64,000 nt of DNA, from contig OZ365109.1 in assembly GCA_977030845.1 (NCBI GenBank), positions 15,934,001-15,998,000 on the forward strand, given 5' to 3'. Below the pieces are notes generated by a model. That model searched no databases and was not told the origin of the DNA. It worked only from the letters and a program-made list of their open reading frames with translations. Each line of letters opens with the position of its first letter. Position 1 is the stretch's first letter. Below are positions 29,301 to 64,000 of the stretch, piece by piece. This stretch comes from Fimbriosthenelais zetlandica (Eukaryota). The position numbers and the translations under genes were made by a program.

Positions 29301-30147
29301 AAAGCAATGCCATTTTGATCACATATTTCTCGGATCTTTGGGTAAGTGTCCCTCATAAGGAAGTTCCTTTCAGCTTTGGTGTCACAGAAAGTGCAAGAGA
29401 TGAAGAGACGAAGCATTTTCTTGGGGACTTTTGAAGATGCTTGGAGATCTCCTCTCAGCAAGGCAGTTATGGCATCTTCAGATGACATCTCTTCTAACCG
29501 AGCATGGATAGCATCTTGCTTTAGTTTTCTTCTGGAATCCTGCATAAGTTAAATCATCAATTTGTATTACAGTTAAAACCCGGTATTAAATTTAAAATAC
29601 ACACTGAAGATAAAGATACAGATATAGATAGAAAAGTAAAGCATTGCCAAGTAAAATAAAGCATTAGGCCTACCTCCATATTTTTGACAGAAGCCCCATC
29701 CTCATCTCTCCAGTCCATGAACAATTTATTACCATTTGGACACGTTGGTCTCCAATAGGAGTATTTATATAACCCATCTTCACATAACTCTTTACCAATG
29801 CTCGGTTCCATGTTCTTCAAATTATCCATCAGCCAAAGCAAGTATATCTTCCCCTTCCCCTTGGGCTCCACTTGTGAATTGCCTGGTAAGGTACTTCCAC
29901 CATTTTTACTTTTGTCCTGAAAATCATTCCTTCTTGTTCTGATATTGCCTGTGCCTTCTGTATTCATTGGAAGGCCTCCACATTCCTCTTCCACATATGG
30001 ATTTGTATTTTCTTCCATCTCTGGTAGTTTTCCTTCGCGGATCATGGTGTCCATCCTGGTCCGGTGTCGACGCATCATCCGGTCAAGTTCCCATTCATGA
30101 AACATACCCAGCCGGTCAGTGACCTGGCTCTTCCATGTCCTAAACAT
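26393..30147 (-). CDS. NWD1/2-related STAND NTPase: death-domain-like N-terminus - DUF4062 - NACHT - helical region, no WD40 (~1093 aa, 3 coding exons)
   Basis: Exons 30147-29674, 29539-28972 and 28632-26393 join in frame (GAG|gtaggc..cag|GAT; CCAG|gtcagt..ttcag|AC). DUF4062 motif RLFISCTFCDTKAERNFLMRDTYPKIREIC..AVDLGWG; Walker A VHGGRGCGKTSLMA; Walker B LFFFFDSIDDL; NWD-type helical motifs RRGLSEPHLLDILSADDEVL, RFPHSIFSKLRHDL and FNHAKLCELP. Confidence 0.9.
28685..28905. mobile_element. TTAA-flanked MITE, family B copy 1 (intron 2 of the NACHT gene)
   Basis: Inverted repeats ccactgctgcgattttgcttgca / tgcaagaaaaatcgcagcagtgg, with TTAA at both outer ends. The internal cacaagcatc(a/g)cctttgtcgcag is shared with 50236-50453. 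Confidence 0.75.
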
Positions 30148-42860: not shown

Positions 42861-45800
42861 TTATGTGAGAGCACTTTTATCATCTTCAAAAGGTAGGCCT
42901 ATATCTTCAGCATTATACGCGGGATTTGTATGTAGATCATTGAGTGCGGTCATCTCATCGCTGGGTTTTGTTCGGACCTTGACGAGGATGAATAAAACCA
43001 CGAATACGATGAGCAAGGCGGCTACAAGGCCACCGAACACGATCCCTACCACTTCTCCAGCACTGAGGTTACCTGAAAACCAACCCAGAAATGTCTGAAG
43101 TTAACGAATTTCATAAGGAATAGAATTCTCTGAATAGGAATGAAAAATGGTTAAAACAGTACTTAATTTAACATTATATCAATACCATATCAATACATGT
43201 TGTCATATAGAGGTAATTACAGATAGTCAAAATCGATTGCCCTGCCACCTAGTGTATGAAGAAAAACCTCCACTTGAAGTCATGGCCACTTCCGGTTCAT
43301 GTGTATTGTCATAGGTTGGAAGTGGGGAATACACAAACGGTTCACAAAAACCTTTCCAGAAGGTGTAATTTATGTCCCCTTTCCACTTTTCAGTGGATGA
43401 CATGGCTTTTATATTCAGTACTGTCCTTATCACAGTAATTGCACAGTGAAGTCATTTAACACTTTGACTCGTGAGAAACAGGAAGCGGAAATCGAGGTGA
43501 CTCCTTGTAGCAGACTGGTCTTACGTTGAGAAACTATAATAATTATAGTTTCTCAAATTATAGTTTCCTCAAATTGAGGCAATTAGAGAGATCAATTATT
43601 GCTCTCTGTAATTGCCTCGATCAAATGTAGGCCTATTTTATAAGCCTACATGCCATCATATATTATATTTATAACATTACTATCTTATAATACACAATAT
43701 TTCGACAGTGATAGTAGACAATTAATACGAATATTTAATATTTTTGCTAGAGTATCTTAGAAATGAATCTGACTTATATAACTGACCTGGGTCTTGGTCA
43801 CCTTCGTCTGGCGGTGTTGTCACTACATTTCCGGGTGAGGTAGGCTTGGTGGATGACGTGGATTTAGTAGAGGTTGTTGTGGATATTGTGCTCACCGTGC
43901 TGCTGGTGGTGGTCTCTGTGGAAGTACTAGCTGTGGTGGAGGTACTAGTGGTGGTCGTTGTCGTTGTCGTTGGGCCTAATGGAGGAAAAAAGGATTATGA
44001 ATAACATAGGAAAAGAGCAAGGTCCCCAATTCAATGCGACCGTATAGATCTGACTCTTTTTAATCGACCTGTCCTTCCTCAAAAAAAGGGCAAAGAAGAA
44101 GAAACGATTATACATGTGCTGTTTTGTGGTCAAAAGTAGCATGTGCTAGCAAACGATGGCCTACCTGGCCTTGTAAGTAAAGAATTGAAAGGGGATGTTA
44201 AGGCTGAGAGAGGAAAATCGGGTTTGAAGAGAAATGGGTCAAGGTTTCAGAATTAGACGAGATAGTACAAAAATGACAAGGATTAAGGGATTCAGGGTTC
44301 GTCCATTATTTTTACAATTACAATTTTAACTTTGAGTATAAGGAAATAAAATGACTCAGCAAGTATTTAAGGCAACAGTTATTTAATGAAATTATACAGT
44401 AATATATTCTATTTACCTGTGAAACCACCAACGTTGATTTCCCAGGATGCTGAAGCACTGGCATAAGAGGCAAATGTTAGCATGGCAAAGGGTGGGATCT
44501 CTTCACCGTCATAATACAGAAGTCTGGTGTCGACACTGTGTTTCTCACCCGTGCCAAACTGAATGATCTGAAAAAAAAACATTTGTTATTGCCGTGAAAT
44601 TGACCCAAGATAGAAATCCATAGGCTGGATTCATACACGAATAAGTTTTCTTACTTTTCGGTTCCATGTTATCCAGAAACTCCTGAATTCCGTTTCGCTA
44701 AGAAGGCCTGGTGTGTGTGCAGAAGCTAATTTTTTGCCACCCACCTCGTCCCTGATATCAGAGTTCCCGGTAACTAATTCCTAGAGATAAATGATCAGTA
44801 TAATTATTACCAGTGTACCTAATACCCACATAATTCATCTTAACTCTTTTTTGAGATAATTTACTATTAGAACTTAGTTTAAAAAATTACAAAAAGAACG
44901 TGAGCCATATGCATTTTCCATATGTGGTATATATTTAAAAATGTTCAATAATTATATTTTTACCTGAAGGACTATTTCATATGTAAATGTATGGAGGTGA
45001 CCAGGGATGACAGAGAGAGCTATGTGTGCTGCATGTTTCGCTTTGAGCCGAAAACTCAATTCATGTATATCCAGAATAGATACTGAGGTTGGGGATCCAG
45101 AAAAAGTTCCAGGCGTTTCCATGAAAATCATATCACCTATAACAAAGTTTTGCATTATTCCATCTGAGATCTAATTCAATAATTATTACCACAATTTATT
45201 ATATATCTTTTAAAAATACAACAGAAGAGGCTGATACAAGCCCAGGTTGGAAAGCTCATCAAAAGTTATAAATTTCTTTTGTGAAACAAAGCTTTACCAT
45301 AATTCATATCAATGGCCCAAAGTGCATCACATTTAGGGCTGCCGGAAGTGAAACCAACTCCATTGAGACTCGCGGGATCGGGATCCAAAAATTTAAGTAT
45401 CGGATGCCCAGGGTACCCACCAAGGCCAGCTGTTAGATCCTTCCCTTCGGTCCAGCGAACCCAAATGGGAATATCGCTTTAGGGAAACAAAAAAGGAATA
45501 AAGTTGATATTCGCTTTTTTATGGACTAGAGTGACAACTAGTACAAAAGCTGAATAACCCTAACAGTAACCCTATTCCCATCAGCCCAGAACTTACAATA
45601 CTAACTTACATGTGGTGTCCCATCATCGTGGGAGTTAGTGCACTGTCTTTTCTTATATTTGCTTTCAGTATCTCAGACATGGTGTTCTCATATGTGCCAA
45701 AAGCCACGGTATAATGTGGTTGGGCACGTGTCAAGGGAAAGAGTGAGACCATTGCTTCTTCACAGGTGCGAACACGGGCAGAAATAGTAAAATCACTTGG

Positions 45801-48800
45801 ATCTTCTGGTAAAATCTGAACTCCATAGTACTGCTTATCACTCATGGTCCTCTCATAGACAACATTACCTGAGAAATAATGTAAAAATACAATTACATTT
45901 AAACTTAAGACATATGGTGCAACCCTGCCCAAGTGAATGTTATGATATTTTATTATCAGCAATCAGCCATATAAACCACATCAGATTTCTCTACTGAGAC
46001 ATATAGATCTACATGGAAAATTCATTCTTCTTATCCCCAGATTAATTATAAACGTTTTAAATAAGCTACCAGTCATTCTGAAGAATTCCCACGTGGAATC
46101 TTTGTCTTCATCATTGGCCCCTGAAGCTAATCCAATGCCCATGATATGATGTAAGTTAGGGTTTTCATATCTATGGAAAGAAACATTTGTTTTGATTTTT
46201 TTTAATTTTGGAATTTTTTACACAGATCCAGACATGGATTATTAAATAGCATAAAATAACACCCATAAAACCACACATAATTTATTAAGGAATAAATCTA
46301 ATGATTACTTATTGCAACAACTATAAAGTTCTGCACACAGTATTATAATACTTCAGTTAATAATTATCTTGTGAATTCTTAGCACTTCATGTGGATAATT
46401 ATTACACAACTTATCCCTTACGTCATCATGGTGCCTCTGCTTATAGTTGCTCCAACGCCAAATTGTACATCTCGGTTTGACCACTTGATCCAGAAGGCTA
46501 TTTGATCAACACAGTTCAGTAGATCCGGCGTGTTCTTGGTCACATTGTTATTAACATCATTAGAGTCACGGATGTAAGATCTTGTAAAAAGGAATTGTTC
46601 AAGCAATTTAGGTACTAACCAAGTAAGAAAGATGAAGGATGCATGCCCTCTTAGGGATGCCAAGCACTTGGTATACAGTTATTTTCCTAGCTACCTCTGA
46701 CCCTAAATAGTTGATTTTACTACAAATTATAGCTAGTTGAAGTCTCAGTAGAGAGAAATCAATTCATAAACATGGTAAGTTGCCCCATTCACAGAGCAGT
46801 CATCTTTTTAGCAAGTATGATGTCACAGGTTGTCACATGGTGTTCGTTAGCCAATCAGAATAAGGAAGAGGTTGGTGCATTTTTCTACACAGTTAGGGGT
46901 CGCCATCTAAGAGTCCAGTCGTAGGTCAGTGGCGCTACTGCGTGTAGCAGGACCTATTTTTATATACTACTCCACACACCTTTCCTTAAACAATTCCCAA
47001 TAGGAAACTGATAAAAAAAAACCCTCCAAGCCATTCCCGTACAACTTATTTCCAATCCTGCATCTTACCTGCCATTATCATCAATGCCTATCTCAGTGGA
47101 TGGGAGAAGAACATTTCCAACTTCAGACACAAGCATTACTCTGGCAGAGAAGCATGACTTGAGTCTGAATACGACACTCTGACGTCCTACCACAGTCAGC
47201 CAGTGTTCGAACTTCCCAGAAGACTTGGAAACAAACTGTGTCATCACCTCTGTGGTTAAAATAAATGAAAATACCATGTTCACCTAGCTGTCTTCGGTAC
47301 CGATGGGCCTATAGATTAGCATAAGTTACTACATGTAACTTCCAACGGTTAGTGGTCAGCACACACTCATTTCATGATCGAACTAGTTAATTGACTCAAT
47401 TTATAAATCAGTTTATAAACTGGGTTGAACATCATATATATACTGTATACCCATTTCAAGAACTGGGCATGTGATTTGCCCAACCAAAAAAAGTGGTGAA
47501 TTAGTTGCCCAATTCATAAAATTAGATGCCCAATTAATAAAATTAGCTGTCCAGTTAACGAATTGGGCAAATCAATTTTCCCAGTTCGTAAACTGTCTGC
47601 ACATTGGGCAGGTTATGATTTTGAACATAGTTGTACTCACCAAATTGGATATAAAGACCCAATACGATTTCAAATCATTCTTAATGAGACTGATTTTGAA
47701 AGACACGCCACTACCTTTATAATATGAGGAATGACAATTGAAATATGACCTATTACGATATATTTACCCTGTTCCTGGGGAATTTTCCATCCGGCAGATG
47801 AAACCATATCCTCTCCTATTCCAATCACGCTGAAGCTGATCTTCTTGGCATTTACAACAGTATGGGAGATGAATGGATTTAGACCCACAGTTCCTTGACC
47901 AATGTTGAGATAAGTGCCACTGGAATTGGTAGCCCATTGGATCCAAAAGTCAATGTAAAGCTCAGGATTCAAAATACCCTTCCCTTCAACAGTTTTCACT
48001 TCGTTATCCTGTTACCAAAATTATATATCCGAGTTAGGCACATGATCATAATTATGAACCACCGAAACCAACTTGAAACCTAAAGTTTCATATCAATGAA
48101 AATATAAAATTATGCTGGTGCTTACTCCATCATATAGGGCTGTGCCAGTATTGTCAAAGGATCCAAGTACTAAATACATGGCCTTAGTGTTAGCCTTGTC
48201 GGCAGCTTCCAATATCGCCACCCTGGCGCTCTGGTAGCCAATAACAGAGAAGGCGAACGTATCAGATGTAGGCATAAACCAAGATTGCTTGAACGAGGAA
48301 TCCTCATTGGTAAAGATCAGAAAGGAGTTACCTGAAATGTCAAGTACATGCCAGAGTAATGTGATCATTAGGAATGACAAGTTTGCTGCAACAATGTTGT
48401 ATCGGAGGCATCAATTCTGTATAATTAATTATTTGATTTTGAACTCAATTTTGAGCTCTATTTTATAAAATATGCTTGGGCAATGCTAGCGATAGATATG
48501 GTATAGATACCAGTGTCTTGACTGAAGGTCCATGTGGCTAACTTGTCAGTGTCAAATCCTGCAGCAATGAGGTCATAATATGGAGGAAGATTGGTATGGA
48601 TTAGTTGCTTTTGCCCAACTGCAGCACCACTTCCGATCTAGAAACAAGAGTGAGCTGCTGAAAAGACTGTAACAGGATTGACATTCTCAAAACAGAAAAA
48701 ATTAAGATGTAAAAGAAATTAAACTTTGTATAACCTTCAAATCTCTATCTTCCCAGGAAGCCCAGAAAAAGGTTGGATAATCCTCGTTGAAATAGCTCAT

Positions 48801-51800
48801 CTCAGATAAACTGTCAAGTAGTTCACCTAAACAAAATAAGTCCCAAAAATCATATCTACCCCAATTCAATTGGAGGGCGATACCCACATAAATGTCCTAC
48901 CTCAACAGCTAGGATTTAATTGGAGGGTGATAGCCATATAAATGTCCTAACTCAATATAATTGAATTGGAGGGTGATATCCGCATAAATGTCCTACCACA
49001 ATAGAATTGAATTGGAGGGCGATACCCACATAAAGGTCCTACCACAATAGGATTGTCCAAATTGGAGGGTGAAATCCACATAAATGTCCTACCACAATAG
49101 AATTTAATTGGAGGGTGATAGCCACATAAATGTCCTCCCACAATAGAATTGAAGTGGAAGGCTATACCCACAGGTTTAGAATATTGTAAAATGAAAGTAA
49201 ATATTTATACCAGATGAGAAATGATATAAAGATAAGCTGGTCTTCTTCATTTGGAGCTCATAGCCATCCACCGTGGAATATTGAGGTGTAGACGAGAACA
49301 TAATGCTACAAGTAGATGTATCTGGCGCAGTAAGAGCAAAAACAATGCTAGTCCTTCCATACAGAGTGTACCAAAATGTGTCATAAGGTCCTGGTTCATC
49401 ATCAGCATTCACAATCAATTCCATTGCAGAGCCTGGAAATGTTGAAATCATTAAAGATTAGCAAATAACAGGATACAGAAGCTCCTCAATAAACAATATT
49501 TCCGCCTGAAATATCTATATATATATATATATATATATATGGTACCTGGATATTATGTATCTACCTGAAAATCTTGGCATGGTTAAGTCCACCTCCAGAT
49601 CTGTATTGAAGCGGACTTGGTGAATATCCAGAGGTTTACTGTCCAACCATTCTAAAATCTTAATCCCGGCTGGGCCACCAAGGGCAATAGTAATCAATCC
49701 ATCCTTCCAACTCAACCACATAAGTTGCTCAACATCGCAAGATATAAAGTCATATTGTTTCTAGAAATATAAAGTCACTTGTTTACAATTGTCTTTGAAA
49801 TTGACTATCTTCTATTTTAATTAAATTTTTGAGTGGAAAGTACAATAATTAATATTGGTGAATTTATCACCACATACCGCCATATGGACGAAAACCCCTT
49901 TCTTAAAGATCAAGAATGTTCGATATGCCAGTGAATACTGCAGCAAGTACAATTGTGATTTGGTATCAGATTCCAGATAGATATGTATTCCTCCAGTGCA
50001 AAATATGCCAGTGAATATTATTTCCTCCTGTCCCGAGGCAAGAGTGTAGCGCAAAGTAGTGTCACCAAACATACTAGGCAGTCTCGTCAGGATTTGGTCA
50101 GCTATAACGAAAATGTATATATATATACACAGTGTAATCAGCTATCCAAGTGAGGGAGATAATAAGATATATAGGGATCATATATAATAATGATAATGCA
50201 ATAAATTATGAAAGAAAAGATCAGGGAACCAAAAGTAAAGCCAGGGCTCCACTGCTGCGATTTTGCTTGCGAAACTGCTGCGACAAAGGTGATCCTTGTG
50301 CAGGAATAAAATTTCTTAATTGTGGTCCAAGTGTCCAAGGCTTAATTTAAGGCCGTCCTCCAATGGCAAATTTATCATTGAAACACAAGCATCGCCTTTG
50401 TCGCAGAGGTGTCGTACGCAAAATCGCAGTGCTCAGTGGTGAGCAGGCTTTAAAGTGAGATAACGCAGTCAAAATTGTTGAACACTTATCAATACGCACG
50501 CTTGTATTTGGAGAACTCCCAGAAGCCAGAGACGCTCCAACTAGTGGTGAAAGAGACATACTGAACATTGTAGGTGGTCATAATCTCATCACTATAAGAT
50601 ATTATCACATCCTGATCCACACTCAAACCTCGACCTAGAGCCACCCGTGATTTACTCCACGACACCCAGAAAGTCACAAACTCATACTGATCCAGAATGT
50701 CAGGGGTGTCAATGACAGACTTATATCCGCCACCGTTCCCTTTCCTGAAAACAAATGCAGAAGATCATTCAAAGAACATATCACAGAAGCTGTGTATGAT
50801 AGGATCTTTTAGATTTCTCCTGCAATATTACACAATAATTGTGACCACTTCAGAGAATCTGAAAGCGATAGGAAGAGATTCGGAAATACTTGAACGTAGA
50901 TTTAATTTATGACGCGTTTTCACTAAATGAGCCTACAGTCGCACAAACGGATTTTGAGTGAGTTGCAGATTCTCAGAGAGACGATTACAATGATAATATT
51001 ATTATATAGCACATGGAGATGTGAAAAATATTATATTTTTAATAACATTTCGAAAACACATCACATTTGTTCCCATCCAAAGCCATTCAATATACCAGGT
51101 GTTGTACAAGAAAATCGTCGATGGCGATGGACCGGCGAGGGTGCCCTCGTCCAGCGATTGCATTGTTGAAGTGCTACTTAAAAAAAAAAAAAAGTGCTTG
51201 GAAAACTGCTTGTTATTGCATTGGCCAAGCACTCTTTTCTCAAAAACATTGCTTGGACAATGCAATTGCTCCGCGAGGGTACCCTCGCCGATTCCTCGCC
51301 ATCGACGATTTTATTGTACAACAGGGGGTTTACCTAAGCCACATTTTGTAGATTATACGATGTAATGTATTATTATTGGTAACATTTTACTTACACTTTT
51401 ATCCCAGTTTTCTGATTATTTTCAAGGCCTATAACGAACTCATATATTGTCAAAGTCTGGAAATGTTCTTCTAGGAGGACATGGGCCGGGCCTATAGTTT
51501 TAACGGCGAAGAACATATGGTTCCCACTCGCTAGTTTGTAACTAACTTGCGGCTTATTGAAATCCGCTGTATTTCTGACGGTGATAGCGGTTGCTGAAGT
51601 GGTAAAAAACATGTAAAGATACAATCGTTAACAAAATTGCTATTATGAGTAGAATAACATAATTTATTATATTGGGTGCAAGTGAACTTTAGGGGCCCGC
51701 CGCCCCAATCCAAGATGGCGGCCTGAAGTCTCGTGAGACAAGGCCCTAAGCAACGGAATAATTTTAAGGGAATAAGAGCATAATTTGTCATTTTAGGTAC

Positions 51801-54800: not shown

Positions 54801-57800
54801 TGTTGGCCGTTGGACAGGCCTTCACCTCCAGTTCCACATGGCCAGAGCTGGAGTACACCCAGACATCTCTGAACACCTCTTCCTGGGGCTGTGTACTAAC
54901 ATAGAATGTGTCACCTACAATATTCAAATAAGAATGTGTGGCCAAATTTAATTTTATATGTCTAAATCTAATCCTCAATAGTTATCCAGTGATGTGGGAA
55001 GCAAGAACTGATCTTTCTAAACATGATAAATCGCCCCAGAGTAAGAGATTCATGAGAGTCAGCCATCTCTAGCAAGTATGATGTCACAGGAAGTCGGTTA
55101 GCCAATCAGAATGGGGATGGGTATTTCCATTGTTATACAAATGAGGCGCCACTGAGCTAAAACTAGACTTTTACATGTCGCCCCGATGTGTAGAAAAATG
55201 CACCAACGTCTTCCTGATTGGCTAACCAACACCATGCGAGATCCTGTGATATCATTCATACTTGCTAAAAGATGGCTGATGTGAGACTGGATCGACTTAT
55301 CATGTTTAGGAATTGATTTCTCTCTACTGAGACATCAGCCAGCTACAATTTGTAGTGAAAACAACTCTCTAAGGTCAGAACTACCTAGGAAAATAACGTT
55401 ATAACAAGTGCCTGACATCCCTTTTTTCATATTTAACGCATGCTGGATTGGGGTAAGGGATTATCAGGGCATTCTGAACCTAAAATGAGGTATCATGAAT
55501 TTGTAAATGCCATCAATACTTACTGGCTATGTCAGGGATGTTCCATACAACAGTATTTCCGTCATTTCCTGATGAGAAACTAAGCACCCTTATGGGCTTG
55601 CCATAAATAATATGGGTCGACAGGAAGGTCTCAAAACCGACCTGCCGTCCATTTCCCACCTCCAAACCTTGATACCACCGTATCCAGAACCATTCACTCT
55701 TGCCACAGAACAGATAACGATTACCAATAGCCAGGTAATCTCCAGATAATCCATCCCTGAAAAATATATTGAAATATTAAATAAAAATCTCATTTTCTCA
55801 TAAATGATAAATGAACCCCAAGGGAAATAAACCAAAACATTGTGGTAATACAATGATGACTTTTCATTTGAATTTTAATGTATGTATAATATATCTACGA
55901 CATAGCTTTCAAGGGTGGAGTATGCGGACTGTATGAACTCCATTTGACTAAAGAGATATTGCTTTAGTACTTGATATAAGTCGATCCCGATCCAAGACCA
56001 ACCAGATAGGAGCCACTGGTTTGGTTTATACCATAGGTGAGTAAGATGAAAGCTTTACTGCAGGATTCAACTTGAAACACAAGGCTGTTGTCATTCTCCT
56101 CCACAAGCCAGACTTTATCAAACCGAGGATTCCCATCAATGACTCCCTCCGAAGGTGTATCAAAGGTGAAATAGTGCCCTGAGAAAAAGAAAACTTTTGT
56201 CTAACTACTATAGTGGATATTTGTTTCTGCACCACTGCACCAAAGAGGTTGGACAAGGCTAGTCCCAACACTGGATTTGCACATGAGGTGACCTTTAGTT
56301 GTAGTAGAAGTTGTAGTAGAAGAACGCAGCGCTTGGGTGCCGTTGTCAAACTGTTATGTAACTTACCTGACTAGCAAAGTTTCTGGGTCAAGGTGTGCAA
56401 ATAGATTATTACTATGTACATAAGATATCACTCACCCATTGAACGGGCAACACCCCACGATCCCTGCACACCTTGAGTTCCAAAAACAATTGAATGGATG
56501 TCTGGAAAATCTCCAGTCAGACGAAGAGCAACTAGTGGATTTACTCCAAGCACAATCCCTTTTCCAAAACTGATAGTGTCGTTAGCCTTCCATCTCAGCC
56601 AATAAATGTGATCCTTATTGCAATCCAAAACATCTGCAGTGGAAAAATGCGTCATTTACGATCGAATTCACCAAAATAAATATATGACAACACAGTTCTC
56701 TGAAGTTTGTGGCCTAAAGAGGAAATGATAATTATTATGTAACAGAGGTTATTCCACCCCAAATATTGTCCATCCATAGGATTAGTATAGGGGGGAAATA
56801 TGCAGTCTGGCGTGACATATTATGTCCAGAATTTGCCCTAGGGAAATACTGGTTGACCTAGTCAAATCGGCCCCAGTTAGGCCTCTGTAGGCCTGCAAGG
56901 TATACCAAAACCCTAATCAGGGCCCCACACTAAGAAGGAAAAAGACTCAAACACGTAGACGTCTTTCCATGCTGATTTCTCAATAATCTCCCCATTGACG
57001 TTGTATTTTTTCCGCGTGAAATGATTTAAACATTGCTTATAAAGGATCCTATGCCATTTTTAAGAAATTTATCAGAAGCAAAAGATGAAAAATTGACGAA
57101 ATAAAACTGTTAATATTTAACTACTATTTACTACTAGGACGACGGTTCTCGAACACAACCAATATAATCCATGGGGTACTTCCAACTAAACTGGGTGTGC
57201 ATGTTCGTGCTCAATGTTCACCGTCTTACTCTTCCTCAGCATTTTATGTTCAAAAAGACATCCTTTTAAAGACATTTATTAAACAAGGTGAAGTTACTGT
57301 ACTAAAAGCAACATTATAAAGCATCCATAGCAGATATGAAAAGTAACAATTTGATTTAATAGGGCATTCATTACATAAAACAAATCGTTTTCTTTAATAA
57401 AATATAGGGCCTAATATTAATTTTTCTAAAATTTTGCAACAAATCACCTCCCAAGGAGTAGCCTTAAATTTCTCACATTTTACTAAATTAATGCACCTTC
57501 GCGTGTCCTTGACATAGAGCCCGGGTATAGACTATATATTAATTATAGGCATCCACTTTGCTTTCAAGTACCTTGCCCCTACTCCCATACCCGGCGCCTC
57601 TTCAAACCGTGACCACTGATCTGTGAAAATTCCATTCAAACAATTATAACTCAGTGATTGGGTATCAACAACTTCCATAGCCTACAGCTTATTTTGCCTG
57701 GTCAACATAGAGAAAAAACATTGGGTCATTCAGTTAGGGTAAAACCACCACAGCATATATACGCCATAGACTTCCCATTCGCACACTGGACTACCCTGAA

Positions 57801-60800
57801 CAAGAATAGGATCTTTCAATGAAATTCTTCACTGAATGATTTATCCCCATTTCTTTTACAATTGCACGACGGTACGTCTATATTTGCAACAAGGATCTAC
57901 ACAATGTTTTTTTACTGCCATGCATCTTGTAAACCTGCTATTACTATATCCCTATAATACACATTAAATTAAATTTCAGTCACACACAATTTTCGACAAT
58001 GTTATAAACAATTAACCATGCCTATACAATCTCTTTTTCCCTTTTCTAGGCCTATTCTAACTCCACTCATTCATTTGACATTGCTCTAATATGATCTATT
58101 TAATTCAAGATAGTCTTTTTCCTACATATCGTATGGTTTACGAAAAAACAAAATCTAAAGTCTCCGTTGTATATGAACAATTTAAATCTTCAGTTGCATT
58201 TTATTTTTTAAAGAGGAGGCACTGTAATCATTGTTTTTTTAACTCACTTTCCATGGTCAATATCCACACATTGATTCCCTATATAATTGTCATATTCACT
58301 TAACCCACAGCAAATCTATTGCCTTTGCGTTTGATGACAATTATGTTACGAGACATTGTTATACCTACCAATGTCAGGGCCTGCATTTACAAATAAGTTA
58401 CTGATATTTGTTCCAGTTACAAGGGTATTTACTTGGCCTAACGGGTGACAGAAAAGATTATAATTAATTGTTTTGCATAAGTACTTTTGATAATTAGCAG
58501 ATGGAAATATAGGAATGAGTTGATTTGGTTGGTTTAATGAAATTCAGAAATGTTTCTCTTTTACCTATCATATTTAGGTTAGAATATACAGCCTATACTC
58601 ATTGAGGTTTAATGATGTGGTCTTATCTCCTTCTCTCTTTCCCCACCCTCTCCCCCTCCCCCTCCCCCCTTCCCCTTCCTCCCCCTTTCCCCTCTCTACC
58701 TGCACCATCCCTATGTGTTTCACAACTTCTCAGTATGATCTCTGCTTCTTACTTCAGATATTCTGTACTACTCTCTTGACCGCCTCTGATGACTATATTG
58801 TATGTGCCTTCAACTACTTAACCCTCAGTCTCACAACCTTTTCTATATATGAATTTAGTTCTGATATTCATGATCATTATCATACATATAAAATGCCATT
58901 CATGTTCATAACTCATGTTCAGCAGTCATCATTGTACCATTGGAATTGTATTGGCCAGAATTTGATTGCTAACAAATCCCTGGTACATTGCCCATGTCAG
59001 CAATGATTAAAATTAGTTGTCAAAATGTTTCTAAATAAATGTGAAGCGTTTTTCACTAAATGAGTATAAAGTTTTCCAGGCCCTTTCAGCGCTACATGCC
59101 TGAAAGCATTTATTTCTCTTTGCATTTTTGCATTAAAAGCAAGTATACAATTTCTTTACTATTTTTCTGAGTTAAATTGAGAAAGTTTCAACTTTGTGAG
59201 TTTTCTCTTGTTTCCTAGTGATTTTTCTTCTAGTTTCTGCTTTCACTACTTGAAATTTCATTGAAATTATATAAATATTTTTCACATCTCTAAGTGTTAT
59301 TTTGTCATTATATATATCATTATAACACTTGTAATCTCTATAAGAATCTAACATCTAACTCAAAATCCATTTTTGTAACTTTAGATTCATTAATGAAAAC
59401 ATGTCACAAATGTCTGCTCACACAAAACCCTACAGGTATGCACATGAGCGATACCGCCAGGTTCGCGTAGCTGTGCATACCGCCAATTCCCCAAAACACC
59501 ACTTCTTTTCACATTTTATTATAATTAGCCTCCATAGACACACACACGAAATAGCCTATGTCAATGGCTTCAGTTTGAAGTTCCACTGGTTAAGGATCTT
59601 GTTTTGTAGATTAAATAAGGTATATTGGCAGGTCTACATTGGTAAATTTTCACATGTGTCACAAGTACACAACAAACTTTAGGCCTACTATTGTAATATT
59701 TTGTCTGGTGGTTATTCATGTTTGGAAATGGTCATTCCTTGTATAATATGGAATCCACCATCATTATGCAGCATTATGTACCATGGGACTTCTTGGGTAT
59801 GCCTAGTACTATGTTTCTATCAAACATTTGCCCCACTTGGATTTTTTTCAAAAATAGACATGTAGAGATTCTAGTAGGCCTACTCAATAGACCTATATTA
59901 TACAGGATTTGTATAAAACAATTTGAAAATACTTTCTTCAATGGGCCAACAGAGTAGTTATGGTTTTCGGTTTCTTTATTTTGCATAATCAGCTGTCAGT
60001 TTATTATTCAGATCTATACAGATAGATCGACAAGCTCCTGTAACTGGACTGCCACCCTATTACCCTTGGTTGCATGAAGTGGGAGATTCATTGTGTCCTG
60101 TATTGTTGGGCCATTACTTTAAGTACCTGCACCTGTTGCAAAATAATTGGACATAGGCCTTAGATGAGAGTTTATAACTGTATAATAAGAAGATCCCAGT
60201 ATCTCTAGGTGCAGAATCCTTTGTGCATGGGTGTTAACCCCATCCCATGTCCTTCCCCATGTCTGACCAGTCACAATAAACACCAAGGTATCTATAGGTT
60301 CCACAGGCCTATTATGCTGGTTTCCTGTAATATTAATTTGCAATGGGAATACAATGATTTGGGGGTATTTTTTGTTGGTTGGGGTCAGACCTCGGGCAGG
60401 TCTGGGTAGGTAAGTCCCCGGTATGCACCAGGGCCATACCAGGGACCTACCACCACCCAGACCTCATACCAGGGACCTACCACCACCCAGACCTCATACC
60501 AGGGACATACCCCACCCAGACCTGCCCTCGGTTCTATCTATTTACACACCTGGAGTTTGTTCTGTTACACCTGGGATGTTCCCCGGACCATTGACTTTAA
60601 TAGAGGTCTCAGTGTTGATTTTTGAACCGATGGCTACGTCAAATGAGGTGACTTGAGCATGACCTTGGATGGCATTGACAGTGACAAGGGCGTCTGAACA
60701 TGCCCGCAACGTAAAGAACATGGAGTGATGGGCAGGGTTGATAGAGTAACTGTCAGTTGTGTCGCCCCTAGTTTCGAAAAGGTATGTGTCTCCTGCAACA

Positions 60801-63800
60801 GTTACAAAGGAAAGGGGATCAAGATTTAAAAAGTAAAGTGTACAACATAGTGAATCTGGTTCATGTATTTGCATAGAAGATGGAATTCCACTTACCTCCA
60901 TCGTTGTCATCGGGCAATTCCTGTTCTGGAACACAAAATAATATGGCACTAAGTGGTATATCATTTCTCAAAAAAGAATACACTTATGAGAGATAGCCAA
61001 CTTTGTCAGTTTTAAACAAAATTCAGACAACATACCCAAACTCCCGAATAACCATTCTCCTCTAACCCCTTCAGCTGTAGATAGCCCGATCGAATTGATG
61101 ATGTGTAATTCCTCTTCGGGGGACCACACAAGGAAAGGTTCCAGGCCCACTTTGTTACCAGTTCCCACCACAAGTTGGTTATCCAACCAGGAGATCCAGA
61201 AAAATCTCATCTGTGAGCAATCAAGGATGTGGGGTGTGCCAAGGAGTACTTCTGGATTTATAGACCATCCAGTTTTCTTCCGAATCATCGAGCGTCGATT
61301 GCTAGCTCCTCCAAGAACAATCTGCAAGCCAATTTCAGATCCTTAATATTATAATGCATACTTGAATTATTCTAGATACAAATGCACAGAACAGAACTTG
61401 AGACAATGGATTGACCTGTTTTTGAAAGCATTACCTCATAGGCCATGGAGTCACTGTTGCCTGGGATGGCAGCTAGGGCAAGGTGAGCGTTACTGCAGGC
61501 TCTCACCATGAAGCCGATTGATTGGCGACCAGTCACACTCACCCAATGCTGGTTATAAGCATATGTCTCTCCTGTCACTGCCATATAGCTCTCCTCTAGT
61601 AGATATATTGATAAAGCCTCCATCATTATAACATTATAACCATGCATGACTACTTATATATAATGCTTATAGGGGCCATGTCAAATGTTTTTTTTCTCCA
61701 AATTTAAGTCCTTTAAAACAGTAGGTGGTGGTCCGAGACCCACTTTAATTTGTGAAAAAAAACTGCATGGAAATCAGTTACCATGATTTCAGCTACTGTT
61801 TCAGCTACACTTTAAAATAGGAGGTGGGGTGCTGGTCTGACTCCAAATTAAAGGACTTAAATTTAGAAAAAAATTGAGATGGCCCCTTTCTGGACCATTT
61901 ACTTGATGTACTGTACAGGAGTCACATCAATTGCTCACATGAGGAAAGGTTGGTCCCTAATTTACAGGCACTGTCACCTCATTCAAGATACTATTGTGAA
62001 TATCTTACCAACGGTCTTTAGTGTGTAAATGTCTGCTGGGGTTGAGCTGTTACGCAGTTTTAAGTCATGCCGAACACATTTTACTATACGACATTGCGAC
62101 CCCGAGGCTCGATAGTTGATCGTACTGGCTCCCATTTGGCAAGCTCTTTCTTTACATCTCTGAATGGAATCTGGGCTAATTTGCACTATCTGGCATCCAC
62201 TTTCCAATCCATCCTCTATCGAATATGCCTTCTCGAAGCTATTATCACAGGGCTCTGGAAGGGGAAATAAAAAATATAATTTAAACAGGTAGTTCGATCA
62301 GTATACAGAACCTAAGTTTGCTGTTATCATTTGCTGGCAGTTTCCAGATGGTAGTTGAAATGTGCTTATACCATAGTATTGGTCGAACTCCCATTCCCCT
62401 TCACCGCTGCCAGTTGAGAAAGTGAGTGACCTAAAGAAGAAGGGTATGATGCCTGATCCTGGTTCTCTGAAAGGCCACTCCAACAAGGCCCTCCCCATCG
62501 ATCCACTATGACCTATACTGATTGTATCACCCTTCCAAGATATCCAGAATCTGAAATCAAAATACATCATTACATACAAGACTAACATAATTATATAAAG
62601 CCATAATAGGGAGTCAGGAAATAAGATAATAGTCAGAGGGATTAGCCATACGGTTTGAAGACTTCGCAGTCCAAAAGATGAGGTATCCTAGCTTTCGCAA
62701 CAACTGTCCCACCAATATAGTTTCGGATTTCAATCTAAAGAAAAGTAAAAGAGGGAACGATACTGTTGGCCGAATTATAAGTCAAATATCCTAAACGTTC
62801 TCGGATGTTATGTTATGCCAGTTCACTTTTCGAGCCAATACTATCTTTGGACACTTGAAATTATTATATCTTTCCGCCTACCATTGTATTGGAATAGCTC
62901 CCAATGATGATCTCAACAGCATCCTTAAACAAGTCTCCTAATGTCCCTGCTAGGGCTACACGAGCATCTGCGCATGCCCGTACACTGAAGGTCACATTAA
63001 GGCGGTTAAGCAATAACCAGCCATGTCCGTATTTGGCGTCATTGTGGGTCATAGCACGGAAAACATTGCCTGTAAAATAGTTTTTGGGGAATGTATAGTT
63101 TGGTTTAGTGCCCTTATAGTCATATGAGCCCTTAAGTCATATAAGGCCAAACTAAATTACACAATGAGTAGTACTTAGTAGCAAAATTGAAGAACCCTGG
63201 CTGAAGGCAAATATGGGTAGCCAATAGTACTGGGAAGGAGAGATAGCAAGCTCAAGTAATGATCATTGTCTTTTAACACATGCATAACATGGTACGTTAC
63301 AATTTTATTACATGTTGCAAGAGCAGCTTACCTCTGCTACGAGGGAAGTTCCAGATACCATCAGAACTGCCTCCCATTGTGATACCAACACTGGCCACAC
63401 GGTACGTGCCACCAGTATGATACGCGTTGAATATTACCCGGTGGTCTGGGTTTGGGCCCTCACCAAAGTTTACTGACTTGTTGGTGACTTTAAGCCAAAA
63501 TGTGTTGTATTCTGTACAGGAGAGTAAATCCTGAGTACCTTCCTCTCTAAGATATGGACCGCCGATGCCATCTCTTATCACAGTGTATCCATTTGCATTC
63601 TGTAATTGGAGGGCAATGATGGAATTATAATTATATTTCAGCTTTCCAAAAAGTGCTTCGCATAAGAAAGTTATACTGGAAATTTGTATTCTTTCTTGTT
63701 TAAGCCAGAACCTTTGAATTTTAGAATCTAAAGTACTAGGCTTCTTACTTGGATCTCAATTTCATACGTTTCTCTGTTTGTCTCAAATGGTACAGAAGAG

Positions 63801-63924
63801 AGTGCCATCTTTGCAAAACCACAGGATTTTATGGAGAAGATGAGGCTGTGGCGACCCAAGATACTCATCCAGAACTGGTGGTATGAATTCACATCACTAA
63901 GGACTTTTACGTGAAAACCCTCAG
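42861..63924 (-). CDS. Giant type-I membrane protein: at least 15 tandem FAMeT-like (Methyltransf_FA) modules + PAN/apple-like module + Thr-rich stalk + TM + NPxY tail; 5' end beyond the right edge
   Basis: Repeated module signature (F.V+AC..A.+.L / YE+.+G / TP.+L.C / FW+SW / +G.G / G.W.F) in exon sets at ~44.4-45.1, 45.3-45.9, 46.1-47.2, 47.8-48.3, 48.5-49.4, 49.5-50.1, 50.5-51.6, 52.0-53.1, 53.3-53.9, 54.0-54.9, 55.5-56.2, 56.4-60.8, 61.0-61.6, 62.3-63.1 and 63.3-63.9 kb. Cys-rich PAN-like exon 62254-62009. Stalk exon 43975-43802 (PTTTTTTTSTSTT..). Final exon 43072-42861 has TM VVGIVFGGLVAALLIVFVVLFILV and tail HTNPAY..ALT*. Some internal exon boundaries were not fully resolved. Confidence 0.85.
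46651..46900 (+). mobile_element. Family A element, left arm only (copy 3)
   Basis: ttagggatgccaagcacttggtatacagttattttcctag.. matches copies 1 and 2 over ~200 bp. Confidence 0.7.
48860..49174. repeat. Minisatellite, ~7 copies of a ~47-bp unit (intron of the FAMeT-repeat gene)
   Basis: Unit aattggaggg(c/t)gata(c/g)ccacataaatgtcctaccacaatagaattg; cores at ~48870, 48920, 48966, 49013, 49062, 49108 and 49153. Confidence 0.9.
49514..49540. repeat. (TA)n microsatellite
   Basis: Direct read of tatatata... at an exon-intron boundary. Confidence 0.9.
50236..50453. mobile_element. MITE family B copy 2
   Basis: taaagccagggctccactgctgcgattttg / caaaatcgcagtgctcagtggtgagcaggctttaa; homologous to 28685-28905. 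Confidence 0.75.
51101..51322. mobile_element. MITE with ~66-bp TIRs
   Basis: gttgtacaagaaaatcgtcgatggcgatggaccggcgagggtgccctcg.. versus the reverse complement of ..cgagggtaccctcgccgattcctcgccatcgacgattttattgtacaac. Confidence 0.8.
51686..51942. mobile_element. Inverted-repeat element with YY1-like CAAGATGGCGGC in both arms and an internal CCTAACCCTAA-like tract
   Basis: actttaggggccc..tccaagatggcggcc..aagtctcgtgag versus ctcgcgagacttggccgccatcttggatcgggcccctaaagt; internal taacctaaccctaaacttcaccctaacctaacccctaaa. Confidence 0.75.
52235..52573. mobile_element. MITE with ~23-bp TIRs and dense internal CGACA/TGTCG motifs
   Basis: ggtgcgtttctactgcggcgaca / tgtcgccgcagtagagtttcacc. The interior is GC-rich with many CGACA words, which produces the spurious ORFs at 52115-52595. 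Confidence 0.75.
54524..54687. mobile_element. Short MITE of the CAGGGGCGGATCCAGGA type with an internal G-tract and CCTAAC repeats
   Basis: Left cagccgcggatttaggg, right aaatcctggatccgcccctg; poly-G at ~54542-54565. Confidence 0.6.
55010..55413. mobile_element. Family A element, long foldback copy (copy 4)
   Basis: The right arm (..ctaaggtcagaactacctaggaaaataac..acaagtgcctgacatccc) is the reverse complement of the family A left arm. Internal inverted pairs are present (ttagccaatcaga / ctgattggctaa; agcaagtatga / tcatacttgct). Confidence 0.75.
60380..60532. repeat. Hairpin element containing a 30-bp unit repeated ~3 times
   Basis: ctcgggcaggtctgggtaggtaagtccccggtatg pairs with cataccagggacataccccacccagacctgccctcgg; unit accagggacctaccaccacccagacctcat x3. 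Confidence 0.75.
61671..61887. mobile_element. MITE with ~45-bp TIRs
   Basis: aggggccatgtcaaatgttttttttctccaaatttaagtcctttaa versus ttaaaggacttaaatttagaaaaaaattgagatggcccct. Confidence 0.8.
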
Positions 63925-64000
63925 CTGAATACCAGCATCAGAAAAGGATGAAGAAGAAAACAATTAACATGTGTTTGGGACTTGGTTGTAAGTAAAATTT

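What the first reader, a model, noticed from the sequence alone, without database searches (positions are those of the whole stretch)
42861..63924. Giant receptor built from at least 15 tandem FAMeT-like modules with a mucin stalk and an NPxY tail
Seen: 15 recognisable, highly diverged modules (no DNA-level repeat identity), an interspersed PAN-like module, a Thr/Ser stalk, one TM helix and a short tail containing NPAY. The gene continues past the window. Known: the Methyltransf_FA domain is named after crustacean FAMeT, lacks a SAM-binding fold and has disputed enzymatic activity; it also occurs with DM9 repeats and in CPAMD8. NPxY is a clathrin/PTB-adaptor signal as in the LDL receptor family. 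Inference: the domain acts here as an extracellular binding module, and the protein is an undescribed multivalent endocytic or scavenger-type (possibly lectin-like pattern-recognition) receptor comparable in design to megalin or the mannose receptor.
Basis: partly seen in the sequence, partly recalled or inferred. Interest (0 to 1): 0.8.

Follow-up and report, generated by a model that had tools for sequence, protein, structure and literature searches.

The report
Giant membrane protein of lectin-like modules
This invertebrate gene encodes a very long cell-surface protein built from at least 15 diverged copies of a sugar-binder-shaped module, a sugar-coated stalk, one membrane helix and a short inner tail; the design is real and I found no paper on it, but what it binds and whether it takes cargo into the cell are untested.

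Summary
On the minus strand, 63924 to 42861, 38 exons join into one open frame of 2430 residues with no stop. All splice sites are GT-AG except one GC-AG. The frame contains 15 full-length Methyltransf_FA (PF12248, "FAMeT") modules, one PAN/apple-fold module between modules 2 and 3, a 63-residue stalk with 40 Ser/Thr, a 24-residue membrane helix, and a 39-residue tail carrying NPAY. The 5' end lies beyond the window.

All junctions between modules are phase 1. An 8.8-kb contig from another species carries 13 of the exons in the same order at 42-69% identity. This is therefore one conserved gene, not several.

A confident model of a related module (pLDDT 95.7) is a ConA-like jelly roll. Its closest solved folds are CBM66 and galectins (Z 11-12.6), not a SAM methyltransferase.

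In other proteins the domain sits next to PAN, WSC, C-type lectin, fibrinogen-related and discoidin domains. Membrane-anchored and mucin-stalked arrays of it occur in other organisms, all unnamed.

The "extracellular binding module" reading is supported at the level of fold and context. The "endocytic receptor" reading rests only on NPAY, whose conservation I could not test. None of the defining domains of megalin or the mannose receptor is present. I found no paper describing such an array.

The parts
42861..63924 (-). Part of the gene lying in the window: 38 exons, 7293 coding bases, 2430 residues plus stop. The 5' end is beyond 64000.
   Evidence: Spliced model with no internal stop. All introns are GT-AG except one GC-AG (donor after 52992)..
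63332..63924 (-). FAMeT module 1 (exons 63924-63749 and 63599-63332)
   Evidence: Homologue HMM E 1.6e-25. Pfam PF12248 scores 25.8 bits on the second exon.
62372..63069 (-). FAMeT module 2 (exons 63069-62882, 62734-62652 and 62550-62372)
   Evidence: HMM E 1.6e-29. Pfam E 2.5e-4 on the first exon.
62009..62254 (-). PAN/apple-fold module: one phase 1-1 exon with six Cys
   Evidence: No Pfam PAN hit. Atlas neighbours are PAN clusters at 0.91-0.92. The AF2 model matches the HGF N-domain at TM 0.71.
61036..61595 (-). FAMeT module 3 (exons 61595-61435 and 61321-61036), the best-conserved module
   Evidence: HMM E 3.3e-39. Pfam scores 49.3 bits on the second exon.
56436..60792 (-). FAMeT module 4 (exons 60792-60550 and 56633-56436), split by a 3916-base intron containing repeats
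   Evidence: The two halves cover HMM positions 12-79 and 77-141. This was the top-scoring donor/acceptor pair for the junction and is in phase 1. The joined module has E 1.6e-22.
55524..56178 (-). FAMeT module 5
   Evidence: HMM E 3.4e-18. No Pfam hit on its single exons.
54051..54914 (-). FAMeT module 6
   Evidence: HMM E 9.2e-14. Pfam E 1.1e-4 on the second exon.
53290..53915 (-). FAMeT module 7
   Evidence: HMM E 7.8e-27. Pfam E 6.4e-3 on the first exon.
52009..53086 (-). FAMeT module 8 (three exons; GC-AG intron after 52992)
   Evidence: HMM E 8.7e-13. No Pfam hit on its single exons.
50500..51593 (-). FAMeT module 9
   Evidence: HMM E 1.7e-32. Pfam scores 47.1 bits on the second exon. 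That exon is 53% identical to its counterpart in contig L001.
49565..50101 (-). FAMeT module 10, the most diverged
   Evidence: HMM E 1.8e-11, covering positions 27-131. Pfam E 1.8e-4 on the second exon.
48511..49432 (-). FAMeT module 11 (three exons; one intron holds a 46-base tandem repeat at 48863-49172)
   Evidence: HMM E 5.9e-14. Tandem repeat.
47768..48331 (-). FAMeT module 12
   Evidence: HMM E 4.5e-18. Pfam E 1.1e-4.
46070..47249 (-). FAMeT module 13 (three exons)
   Evidence: HMM E 4e-25. Pfam E 9.6e-4 on the middle exon.
45298..45868 (-). FAMeT module 14
   Evidence: HMM E 1.9e-17. Pfam E 1.6e-3 and 0.032.
44417..45136 (-). FAMeT module 15 (three exons)
   Evidence: HMM E 1.9e-26. 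Pfam scores 31.7 bits on the middle exon.
43787..43975 (-). Mucin-like stalk exon, phase 1-1
   Evidence: 40 Ser/Thr in 63 residues. Strong splice sites on both sides.
42861..43072 (-). Last coding exon: juxtamembrane segment, membrane helix, 39-residue tail and stop
   Evidence: Joins the stalk exon in phase 1. Sub-threshold Pfam matches are to the membrane regions of single-pass proteins (Syndecan, Glycophorin A, DAP10).
42981..43052 (-). Membrane helix of 24 hydrophobic residues, followed by K-V-R-T-K
42915..42926 (-). NPAY motif, 19 residues after the helix
   Evidence: The chance of NPxY in a random 39-mer of this composition is 0.0024.

Best explanation
Shown from the sequence: this is one gene for a giant type I membrane glycoprotein. 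Its outer part is a nearly linker-free chain of at least 15 FAMeT modules, more if the array continues upstream, with one PAN/apple module inserted after module 2. The chain sits on a Ser/Thr-rich, presumably O-glycosylated, stalk. A single helix and a 39-residue acidic tail with NPAY follow.

Inferred from a relative's model and from domain context: each module is a ConA-like/galectin-type beta-sandwich, not an enzyme, and works as an extracellular binding unit. The ligands are most likely glycans or glycan-rich matrix. Because the modules are only about 21% identical to each other, the chain probably offers many different sites or a long spacer with several active sites. It is unlikely to present 15 equal sites.

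Inferred from one motif only: the tail's NPAY recruits a PTB-domain adaptor, coupling bound material to clathrin uptake or to the cortex.

My odds are 0.85 for the architecture and topology, 0.4 for glycan or matrix binding by the modules, and 0.25 for endocytic cargo uptake as the main job.
For: One gene. 38 exons join with no stop. All 15 junctions between modules, and the junctions around the PAN, stalk and last exons, are in phase 1 with good splice sites. Thirteen exons recur in the same order, with the same boundaries, at 42-69% identity in contig L001 from another species, whereas DNA similarity is limited to exons.

Extracellular position.
- A mucin-like stalk lies next to the helix, and basic residues follow the helix.
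- There is a six-Cys PAN-fold module.
- The ectodomain has ten N-x-S/T sequons.
- The two family Cys positions are kept or lost together across modules: 8 have both, 5 neither, 2 one. My one-sided Fisher test gives about 0.011, which fits a disulfide.

Fold. AF2 on a Lingula module that is 41% identical to module 3 over the 94 residues of its second exon gives pLDDT 95.7 and an all-beta model. Its best solved matches are CBM66 at Z 12.6 and galectins at Z 11-12, with about 120 of 136 residues aligned. Foldseek returns GH16 glucanases and galectins.

Context in other proteins.
- FAMeT with PAN_1 and a C-terminal helix, in the annelid Owenia.
- FAMeT with trypsin, TSP1, C-type lectin and fibrinogen-C, in Owenia.
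- FAMeT with eight WSC, sushi and discoidin domains plus a helix, in a 7735-residue protein.
- Eight FAMeT modules with Big_12, EGF and a helix, with Y-x-x-hydrophobic motifs at the C-terminus, in about 3000-residue proteins.
- At least 35 modules followed by a TTKP mucin repeat, in contig L005.
- Secreted FAMeT proteins in sea-star adhesive footprints (PMC9382459) and mollusc shell matrix (PMC6003135, PMC8194122).

Motif. NPxY is expected by chance in 0.24% of tails of this length.
Against: - No transcript, signal peptide or N-terminus could be examined, because the 5' end is outside the window.
- The structure was predicted for a relative, not for this protein's own modules, because every module here is split by introns.
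- A shared fold does not show sugar binding. Identity to galectins is about 8%, and I could not map the conserved residues onto the model.
- The polar family residues vary between modules (E51 in 9 of 15, N59 in 8 of 15), so many modules may be spacers.
- The domain is also used inside cells, in arthropod FAMeT, an Arabidopsis BTB protein and a Lingula giant modelled without signal peptide or helix.
- NPAY lacks the hydrophobic residue at -5 of the LDL-receptor signal.
- Searches with the last exon and with the last module exon found no orthologue.
- The other membrane-anchored relatives lack NPxY.
Confidence: 0.5

Rival explanations
1. Structural tether. The protein is a membrane-anchored component of an extracellular material such as cuticle, apical matrix, adhesive or glycocalyx. 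The module chain acts as a long rod that cross-links or spaces that material. The tail anchors it or has no signalling role, and no cargo is taken up.
For: The published extracellular FAMeT proteins are all parts of secreted materials: sea-star footprints (PMC9382459) and mollusc shell matrix. Neighbouring modules are separated by only 0-12 residues, which suits a rod. The modules have drifted to 9-35% identity and have partly lost the polar family residues. NPxY also serves adhesion receptors (integrin beta tails; from my own knowledge).
Against: Nothing places the protein in a matrix-secreting tissue. Partner domains in relatives (C-type lectin, fibrinogen-C, WSC, discoidin) point to recognition as much as to structure. 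Thirteen exons are kept at 42-69% identity in another species, which is more constraint than a pure spacer needs.
Confidence: 0.25
2. Immune pattern-recognition receptor. The module chain recognises microbial surfaces and the protein belongs to the animal's innate defence, possibly with the TIR receptor and NACHT genes that lie 13-19 kb away.
For: The modules have a lectin-like fold. An Owenia relative joins FAMeT modules to trypsin, C-type lectin and fibrinogen-C domains, a layout typical of recognition proteases and lectins. In arthropod FAMeT the domain is fused to DM9 repeats (PMC10015273), and separate oyster DM9 proteins bind mannose and microbes (papers listed). Human CPAMD8, a thioester-family protein, carries the domain. 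The window also holds a TIR/Frizzled/sushi receptor and a NACHT gene.
Against: The neighbouring genes are well separated and nothing links them to this gene. The tail has no signalling domain. No expression or induction data exist. Strong divergence between modules is not in itself evidence of immune diversification.
Confidence: 0.12
3. Not one protein. The region holds several short genes, a decaying pseudogene array, or alternative cassettes that are never all joined.
For: No RNA evidence was available. All modules are phase 1-1 cassettes, so skipping any module keeps the frame. Insect famet genes vary module number by alternative splicing (PMC10015273). A 3.9-kb intron interrupts module 4.
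Against: A single frame of 2430 residues carries no stop across 38 exons. Module 4 is completed only by splicing across the long intron. There is no in-frame start with a signal peptide and no terminal exon inside the array. The exon order and boundaries are conserved in another species.
Confidence: 0.06
4. The modules are active farnesoic-acid methyltransferases, as the family name suggests.
For: Only the Pfam family name and reports of activity for some crustacean proteins (from my own knowledge).
Against: The modelled fold is a beta jelly roll with no Rossmann-type SAM-binding fold. Here the modules sit outside the cell on a mucin stalk. No SAM-methyltransferase family was matched by any exon.
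Confidence: 0.02

Closest known systems
Lingula anatina uncharacterized protein LOC106167937 (XP_013402294.1, 3814 aa; P0001)
   Same: It was the best hit among 1.84 billion representatives (E 6.4e-164). It has 14 tandem PF12248 modules and is an unnamed giant array in a lophotrochozoan.
   Different: Its modules are only 20-41% identical to those here, so it is not an orthologue. The model has no membrane helix, stalk or signal peptide. Its modules are much more alike (median 38%, maximum 90%) and are spaced about 210 residues apart.
Owenia fusiformis unnamed protein CAH1779588.1 (908 aa; P0054)
   Same: It combines FAMeT modules, PAN modules and one C-terminal membrane helix in an annelid. 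Of the proteins recovered, it is the closest match in the kinds of parts.
   Different: It has two FAMeT modules rather than 15 or more, no mucin stalk, and a five-residue tail without NPxY.
Unnamed giant array in contig L005 (run SRR23372229)
   Same: At least 35 tandem FAMeT modules lie on one strand, followed by a Thr/Pro-rich (TTKP) mucin-like repeat. The layout of an array followed by a stalk is the same.
   Different: Its modules are mostly not split by introns and are 20-27% identical to those here. The contig ends inside the mucin repeat, so its helix and tail are unknown. The organism is unknown.
Secreted FAMeT-domain proteins: sea-star footprint proteins Sfp1/3/4a/5/7/8, Haliotis shell protein UP5 (P86728), human CPAMD8
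   Same: They use the same domain outside the cell (PMC9382459, PMC6003135; one search gives TM 0.89 to CPAMD8 residues 959-1089 and to UP5). The domain's role is stated to be unknown.
   Different: They have at most two modules where the count is known (two in Sfp7 and Sfp8), are secreted rather than membrane-anchored, and have other partner domains.
Arthropod FAMeT (for example Drosophila CG10527)
   Same: It is the founding member of PF12248.
   Different: It has one to four modules, in insects followed by a DM9/DUF3421 domain (PMC10015273). It is cytosolic with a disputed enzymatic role (my own knowledge), and has no stalk or helix.
LDL-receptor family (megalin/LRP2) and mannose-receptor family
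   Same: The design principle is shared: a long chain of independent binding modules, one helix, and a short tail with a tyrosine-based motif about 15-20 residues from the membrane.
   Different: No LDL-A, EGF/YWTD, C-type lectin, ricin or FnII domain was found in any exon scanned. The tail reads H-T-N-P-A-Y, without the hydrophobic residue at -5. It is not a member of either family.
Galectins and bacterial CBM66
   Same: The predicted module fold aligns over about 120 of 136 residues at rmsd 2.3-3.0 and Z 11-12.6.
   Different: Sequence identity is 7-13% and no sequence-level match exists. A profile search of PDB sequences gave only a marginal CBM32 hit at E 0.05. The galectin sugar-binding residues were not found.

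Membership tests
Methyltransf_FA (Pfam PF12248) | Match to the family HMM above the gathering score (24.2 bits) | tested here: met
   Four single exons pass on their own at 25.8, 49.3, 47.1 and 31.7 bits. PF12248 is the best hit for exons of 12 of 15 modules. An HMM built from Pfam-positive homologues scores all 15 spliced modules at 30-120 bits. Pfam itself could not be run on spliced modules.
Methyltransf_FA (Pfam PF12248) | Hallmark residues of the family (F26, the W91/W94 FWISW motif, G104, W138) | tested here: met
   They are kept in 13, 13, 14, 13 and 14 of the 15 modules respectively.
PAN/apple domain (PF00024, PF14295) | Match to a PAN HMM | tested here: not met
   No PAN family was returned at E up to 1. 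The only hit was TSP1_ADAMTS at E 0.007-0.017.
PAN/apple domain (PF00024, PF14295) | PAN fold: a five-stranded sheet packed on one helix and tied by disulfides | tested here: inconclusive
   The single-sequence AF2 model has pLDDT 67 and the order strand-strand-helix-strand-strand-strand. Its best PDB matches are HGF N-domain PAN modules at TM 0.71 and E 0.012, followed by plasminogen and an Eimeria PAN module. Six Cys are present. The model's confidence is only moderate.
Type I single-pass membrane protein | One hydrophobic helix with basic residues on the cytoplasmic side | tested here: met
   A 24-residue helix at 43052-42981 is followed by K-V-R-T-K.
Type I single-pass membrane protein | N-terminal signal peptide | not testable with these tools
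   The first exon in the window starts at a phase-1 acceptor at 63924, and the N-terminus lies beyond base 64000.
LDL-receptor family (megalin/LRP) | LDL-A repeats and EGF/YWTD propellers in the ectodomain | tested here: not met
   No such Pfam family appears in any exon scanned.
LDL-receptor family (megalin/LRP) | FxNPxY internalisation signal in the tail | tested here: inconclusive
   NPAY is present, with His at -5 instead of Phe/Tyr. Its conservation in orthologues could not be tested.
Mannose-receptor family | Ricin-type, FnII and tandem C-type lectin domains | tested here: not met
   None was found in any exon scanned.
Galectins | Galectin sequence signature and beta-galactoside binding | tested here: not met
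   There is fold similarity only (Z 11-12 at 7-13% identity). No galectin sequence was matched by the family profile in PDB. Binding cannot be tested here.
Mucin-type stalk | A dense Ser/Thr/Pro segment next to the membrane | tested here: met
   40 Ser/Thr and 46 Ser/Thr/Pro in 63 residues. O-glycosylation itself cannot be tested here.

The most novel reading that the evidence does not exclude
The FAMeT domain would be an unrecognised animal lectin or carbohydrate-binding-module family. Giant membrane-anchored chains of it, as seen here, in contig L005, in Owenia and in the roughly 3000-residue intronless unnamed giants from unidentified source organisms, would form an old and widespread class of multivalent glycan receptors. 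These would capture glycan-coated particles or matrix and hand them to the endocytic machinery through tyrosine-based tail signals (NPAY here, Y-x-x-hydrophobic in the roughly 3000-residue unnamed giants). Because every module is a phase 1-1 cassette, alternative splicing could in addition tune which binding sites are displayed.
Probability: 0.2. Interest if true: 0.75.

Novelty: new variant of a known kind. Interest (0 to 1): 0.5.

Why it matters
PF12248 is named after an enzyme activity that its fold does not support. It keeps turning up in extracellular materials such as sea-star glue and mollusc shell, and in human CPAMD8, with the authors stating that its role is unknown.

A conserved gene that strings 15 or more of these modules on a mucin stalk above the membrane is strong circumstantial evidence that the domain is a binding module. 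Its fold is closest to CBM66 and galectins, and its relatives are fused to known lectin domains.

The gene also offers a tractable set of diverged modules to test on glycan and matrix arrays. If binding is shown, a large set of unnamed giant proteins in brachiopods, annelids, hemichordates, amphioxus and other, unidentified organisms would gain a function. The domain's presence in CPAMD8, adhesives and shell proteins would become interpretable as well.

Tried and rejected
- Tail conservation. A search of 5.8 billion proteins with the last exon and with the last module exon found nothing, so conservation of the tail and NPAY could not be tested.
- The 3' end of the L005 array. All contigs stop inside the TTKP repeat.
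- The window's own protein or a close orthologue. None was among the 150 best representative hits. The nearest was a 74-residue exon product at 54% identity, which led to contig L001.
- Species. A search with the neighbouring one-exon TIR receptor gave only unnamed relatives at 42-49% identity, so the species was not identified.
- Solved structures. A sequence-profile search of PDB gave only a marginal CBM32 hit at E 0.05, so no solved FAMeT structure was found.
- Separate modules 4B and 5A. The 60.5-56.6 kb interval might have held a separate back half for module 4 and front half for a further module. I rejected this because the two flanking halves complement each other on the HMM and splice in phase.
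- Block 52602-52387. I rejected it as an exon because the junction 52607 to 52138 completes module 8.
- Structure of the window's own modules. It could not be predicted, because every module is split by introns and only contiguous references can be submitted.
- Slips. One search failed on a size limit and was repeated.

Full report
WHAT IS THERE

The window is AT-rich animal DNA, about 37% GC. I first made a three-frame translation of the minus strand. I then built an HMM only from outside homologues, using domain instances taken from the hits of a 1.84-billion-protein search. With that HMM, every match at E<1 lies on the minus strand between 63913 and 44424. Nothing matches on the plus strand or elsewhere in the 64 kb. 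The matches come as complementary front and back parts of the 145-position domain model, which is what a module split by introns would give.

GENE MODEL

I listed donor and acceptor pairs that keep the frame and joined 38 exons into 7293 coding bases. This gives 2430 residues and then the stop, with no internal stop. All introns are GT-AG except one GC-AG, whose donor follows 52992.

On the spliced product the outside HMM finds 15 near-full-length modules, with E-values from 1.8e-11 to 3.3e-39. The apparent extra half-modules at 60.8-60.5 kb and 56.6-56.4 kb are one module. They cover HMM positions 12-79 and 77-141, and they are joined across a 3916-base, repeat-bearing intron by the top-scoring splice pair for that junction.

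Most modules are built from two exons, some from three. Every junction between modules is in phase 1, as are the junctions around the PAN exon, the stalk exon and the last exon. Neighbouring modules are separated by 0-12 residues.

Pfam's own PF12248 model can only be run on single exons of about half a domain. Even so, it is the best hit for exons of 12 of the 15 modules and exceeds the gathering score for four exons.

The modules are old copies. Median identity is 21%, and there is no exon-to-exon DNA similarity. The only DNA repeats are in introns.

IS IT ONE REAL GENE?

No RNA could be examined, but three observations argue for a single conserved gene.

- The reading frame is continuous across 38 exons.
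- Module 4 exists only if the long intron is spliced out.
- An 8.8-kb contig from another species (L001, run ERR14368249) carries 13 consecutive exons, from the second exon of module 9 to the second exon of module 14. They lie in the same order, with the same boundaries, at 42-69% protein identity, and nucleotide similarity is confined to exons.

OTHER PARTS

The exon at 62254-62009 encodes 81 residues with six Cys. Pfam PAN models do not match it. Its protein-language-model neighbours are PAN clusters with scores 0.91-0.92. A single-sequence AF2 model (pLDDT 67) has the PAN order of strands and helix and best matches the PAN module of HGF, at TM 0.71 over the whole length. Plasminogen and an Eimeria PAN module follow. 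I call it PAN-fold, with moderate confidence.

The stalk exon has 40 Ser/Thr in 63 residues. The last exon encodes a 24-residue helix (43052-42981), then K-V-R-T-K, and a 39-residue acidic tail with NPAY (42926-42915) 19 residues after the helix. A random tail of this length and composition contains NPxY 0.24% of the time. Because a reader would have flagged several other motifs as well, the real surprise is smaller.

WHAT THE MODULE IS

No module in the window is contiguous, so I modelled a Lingula module instead. It is 41% identical to module 3 over the 94 residues of its second exon, and I supplied a 70-sequence family alignment. The model is very confident (pLDDT 95.7, pTM 0.90) and all-beta.

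Against reviewed UniProt models it matches the FAMeT domain of human CPAMD8 (residues 959-1089) and Haliotis shell protein UP5, both at TM 0.89. Galectin-1, GH16 glucanases, L-type lectin domains and SPRY domains come next.

Against solved structures the best matches are the fructan-binding CBM66 of Bacillus subtilis (Z 12.6) and many galectins (Z 11-12). About 120 of 136 residues align at rmsd 2.3-3.0. The fold is a ConA-like jelly roll with nothing resembling a SAM-dependent methyltransferase. Sequence identity to these folds is about 8%, and a profile search of PDB sequences gave only a marginal CBM32 match. This is therefore a statement about shape, not about sugar binding.

Within the window the structural hallmark residues are well kept: W91 in 13, W94 in 14 and W138 in 14 of 15 modules. 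The polar family residues are kept in only 8-9 modules. The two family Cys positions are retained or lost together (8 both, 5 neither, 2 single). That fits a disulfide and an extracellular life.

CONTEXT FROM RELATIVES

The profile search found 2490 proteins, 410 of them at E up to 1e-10. Multi-module proteins occur in several groups:

- the brachiopod Lingula (14 modules, 3814 aa)
- amphioxus
- the hemichordate Glandiceps
- moths and the house fly
- the annelid Owenia
- several organisms I could not identify.

All of these proteins are labelled uncharacterized. Several share pieces of the present design.

- Owenia CAH1779588.1 has two FAMeT modules, PAN_1 modules and a C-terminal helix.
- Contig L005 has at least 35 tandem modules followed by a TTKP mucin-like repeat, where the contig ends.
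- A set of roughly 3000-residue proteins has eight FAMeT modules, Big_12 and EGF domains, a helix, and tails ending in Y-x-x-hydrophobic motifs.
- A 7735-residue protein combines five FAMeT modules with eight WSC domains, sushi and discoidin domains and a helix.
- Another Owenia protein joins trypsin, TSP1, three FAMeT modules, a C-type lectin domain and a fibrinogen-C domain.

The domain therefore keeps company with known glycan-recognition modules and is repeatedly displayed on the cell surface. It is also used inside cells: arthropod FAMeT, an Arabidopsis BTB protein, and the Lingula model, which has no signal peptide or helix.

LITERATURE

The papers I could search mention the domain in four settings: arthropod FAMeT with one to four modules (PMC10015273), sea-star footprint proteins (PMC9382459), mollusc shell-matrix proteins (PMC6003135, PMC8194122) and CPAMD8 (PMC9358689, PMC9363628). 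The sea-star authors state that its role is unknown. I found no paper on large tandem arrays, on membrane-anchored forms or on the fold.

HOW IT MOST LIKELY WORKS

Shown: this is one conserved gene whose product has the layout of a type I membrane glycoprotein. A long, nearly linker-free chain of 15 or more beta-sandwich modules and one PAN module is held away from the membrane by a mucin-like stalk.

Inferred: the modules are binding units, most likely for glycans or glycan-rich matrix. The chain gives multivalency or reach.

Weakly inferred: NPAY binds a PTB-domain adaptor, so that what is bound outside is internalised or the protein is tied to the cortex.

The main rival is a structural tether within a secreted material, which would agree with the only published extracellular occurrences of the domain. 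An immune-recognition role is a narrower version of the main reading. The TIR and NACHT genes elsewhere in the window are too far away and too unconnected to count as evidence for it.

COMPARISON AND VERDICT

The protein is a member of PF12248 many times over, and probably carries one PAN-fold module. It is not a member of the LDL-receptor or mannose-receptor families, because none of their defining domains is present. It resembles them only in design.

I rate it a new variant of a known kind: a known domain and a known receptor layout, in a combination and on a scale that nobody has described, although unnamed relatives sit in public databases. Interest is moderate. The architecture is solid, and the fold result gives the domain a testable role. 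The scan's earlier notes hold nothing on this gene or this domain.

Noticed in passing
window 44417-63924, all junctions between modules: Every FAMeT module, the PAN exon and the stalk exon are phase 1-1 units, so skipping or duplicating any of them keeps the reading frame. Insect famet genes are reported to vary module number by alternative splicing (PMC10015273). Cassette splicing here is possible but untested.
   Followed up: partly
window 52992 (donor) to 52828 (acceptor), minus strand: This is the only non-GT donor in the model, a GC-AG intron inside module 8. The same nine bases (CAGGCATGT) occur at both the donor and the acceptor.
   Followed up: partly
L005:1-17283 (run SRR23372229; the same gene in L006 and L007): A 20.7-kb contig of an unidentified AT-rich organism carries at least 35 tandem FAMeT modules on one strand. 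They are mostly uninterrupted, with one 1331-residue ORF holding nine of them. The array ends in a TTKP mucin-like repeat, where all contigs break.
   Followed up: partly
P0014 (Owenia fusiformis CAH1798441.1): A secreted mosaic of trypsin, TSP1, three FAMeT modules, a C-type lectin domain and a fibrinogen-C domain. The layout resembles a recognition protease with built-in lectin heads.
   Followed up: no
P0018, P0020, P0040, P0059, P0080, P0097; locus L004: Intronless genes of about 9 kb from unidentified organisms encode 2900-3000-residue proteins with eight FAMeT modules, Big_12 and EGF domains and a C-terminal helix. In four of the six (P0018, P0059, P0097 and probably P0080) the short tail ends in a Y-x-x-hydrophobic motif; P0020 and P0040 do not.
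   Followed up: partly
window 55146-55422 and 46653-46935: Two copies of a roughly 285-base interspersed repeat, 81% identical and in opposite orientation, lie in two different introns of the gene. Another intron pair (59252-59411 and 50905-51051) is 73% identical.
   Followed up: no
window 48863-49172 and 60435-60523: Intronic tandem repeats: a 46-base unit in about 6.6 copies, and a 30-base unit in 3 copies.
   Followed up: no
window 23467-25119 (+): A one-exon ORF of 550 residues. Its four relatives in other assemblies (42-49% identity) all carry TIR, Frizzled-CRD and sushi Pfam domains, so this unusual receptor layout is conserved. None of them has a name.
   Followed up: partly
window 26393-28612 (-), 28958-29545 (-): ORFs with NACHT/NWD1-type winged-helix and NPHP3-type domains: a STAND ATPase gene lying tail-to-tail with the TIR receptor.
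   Followed up: partly
window 13949-15289 (-): A 446-residue ATG-started ORF in the most GC-rich stretch of the window (43%). It has no Pfam match.
   Followed up: partly
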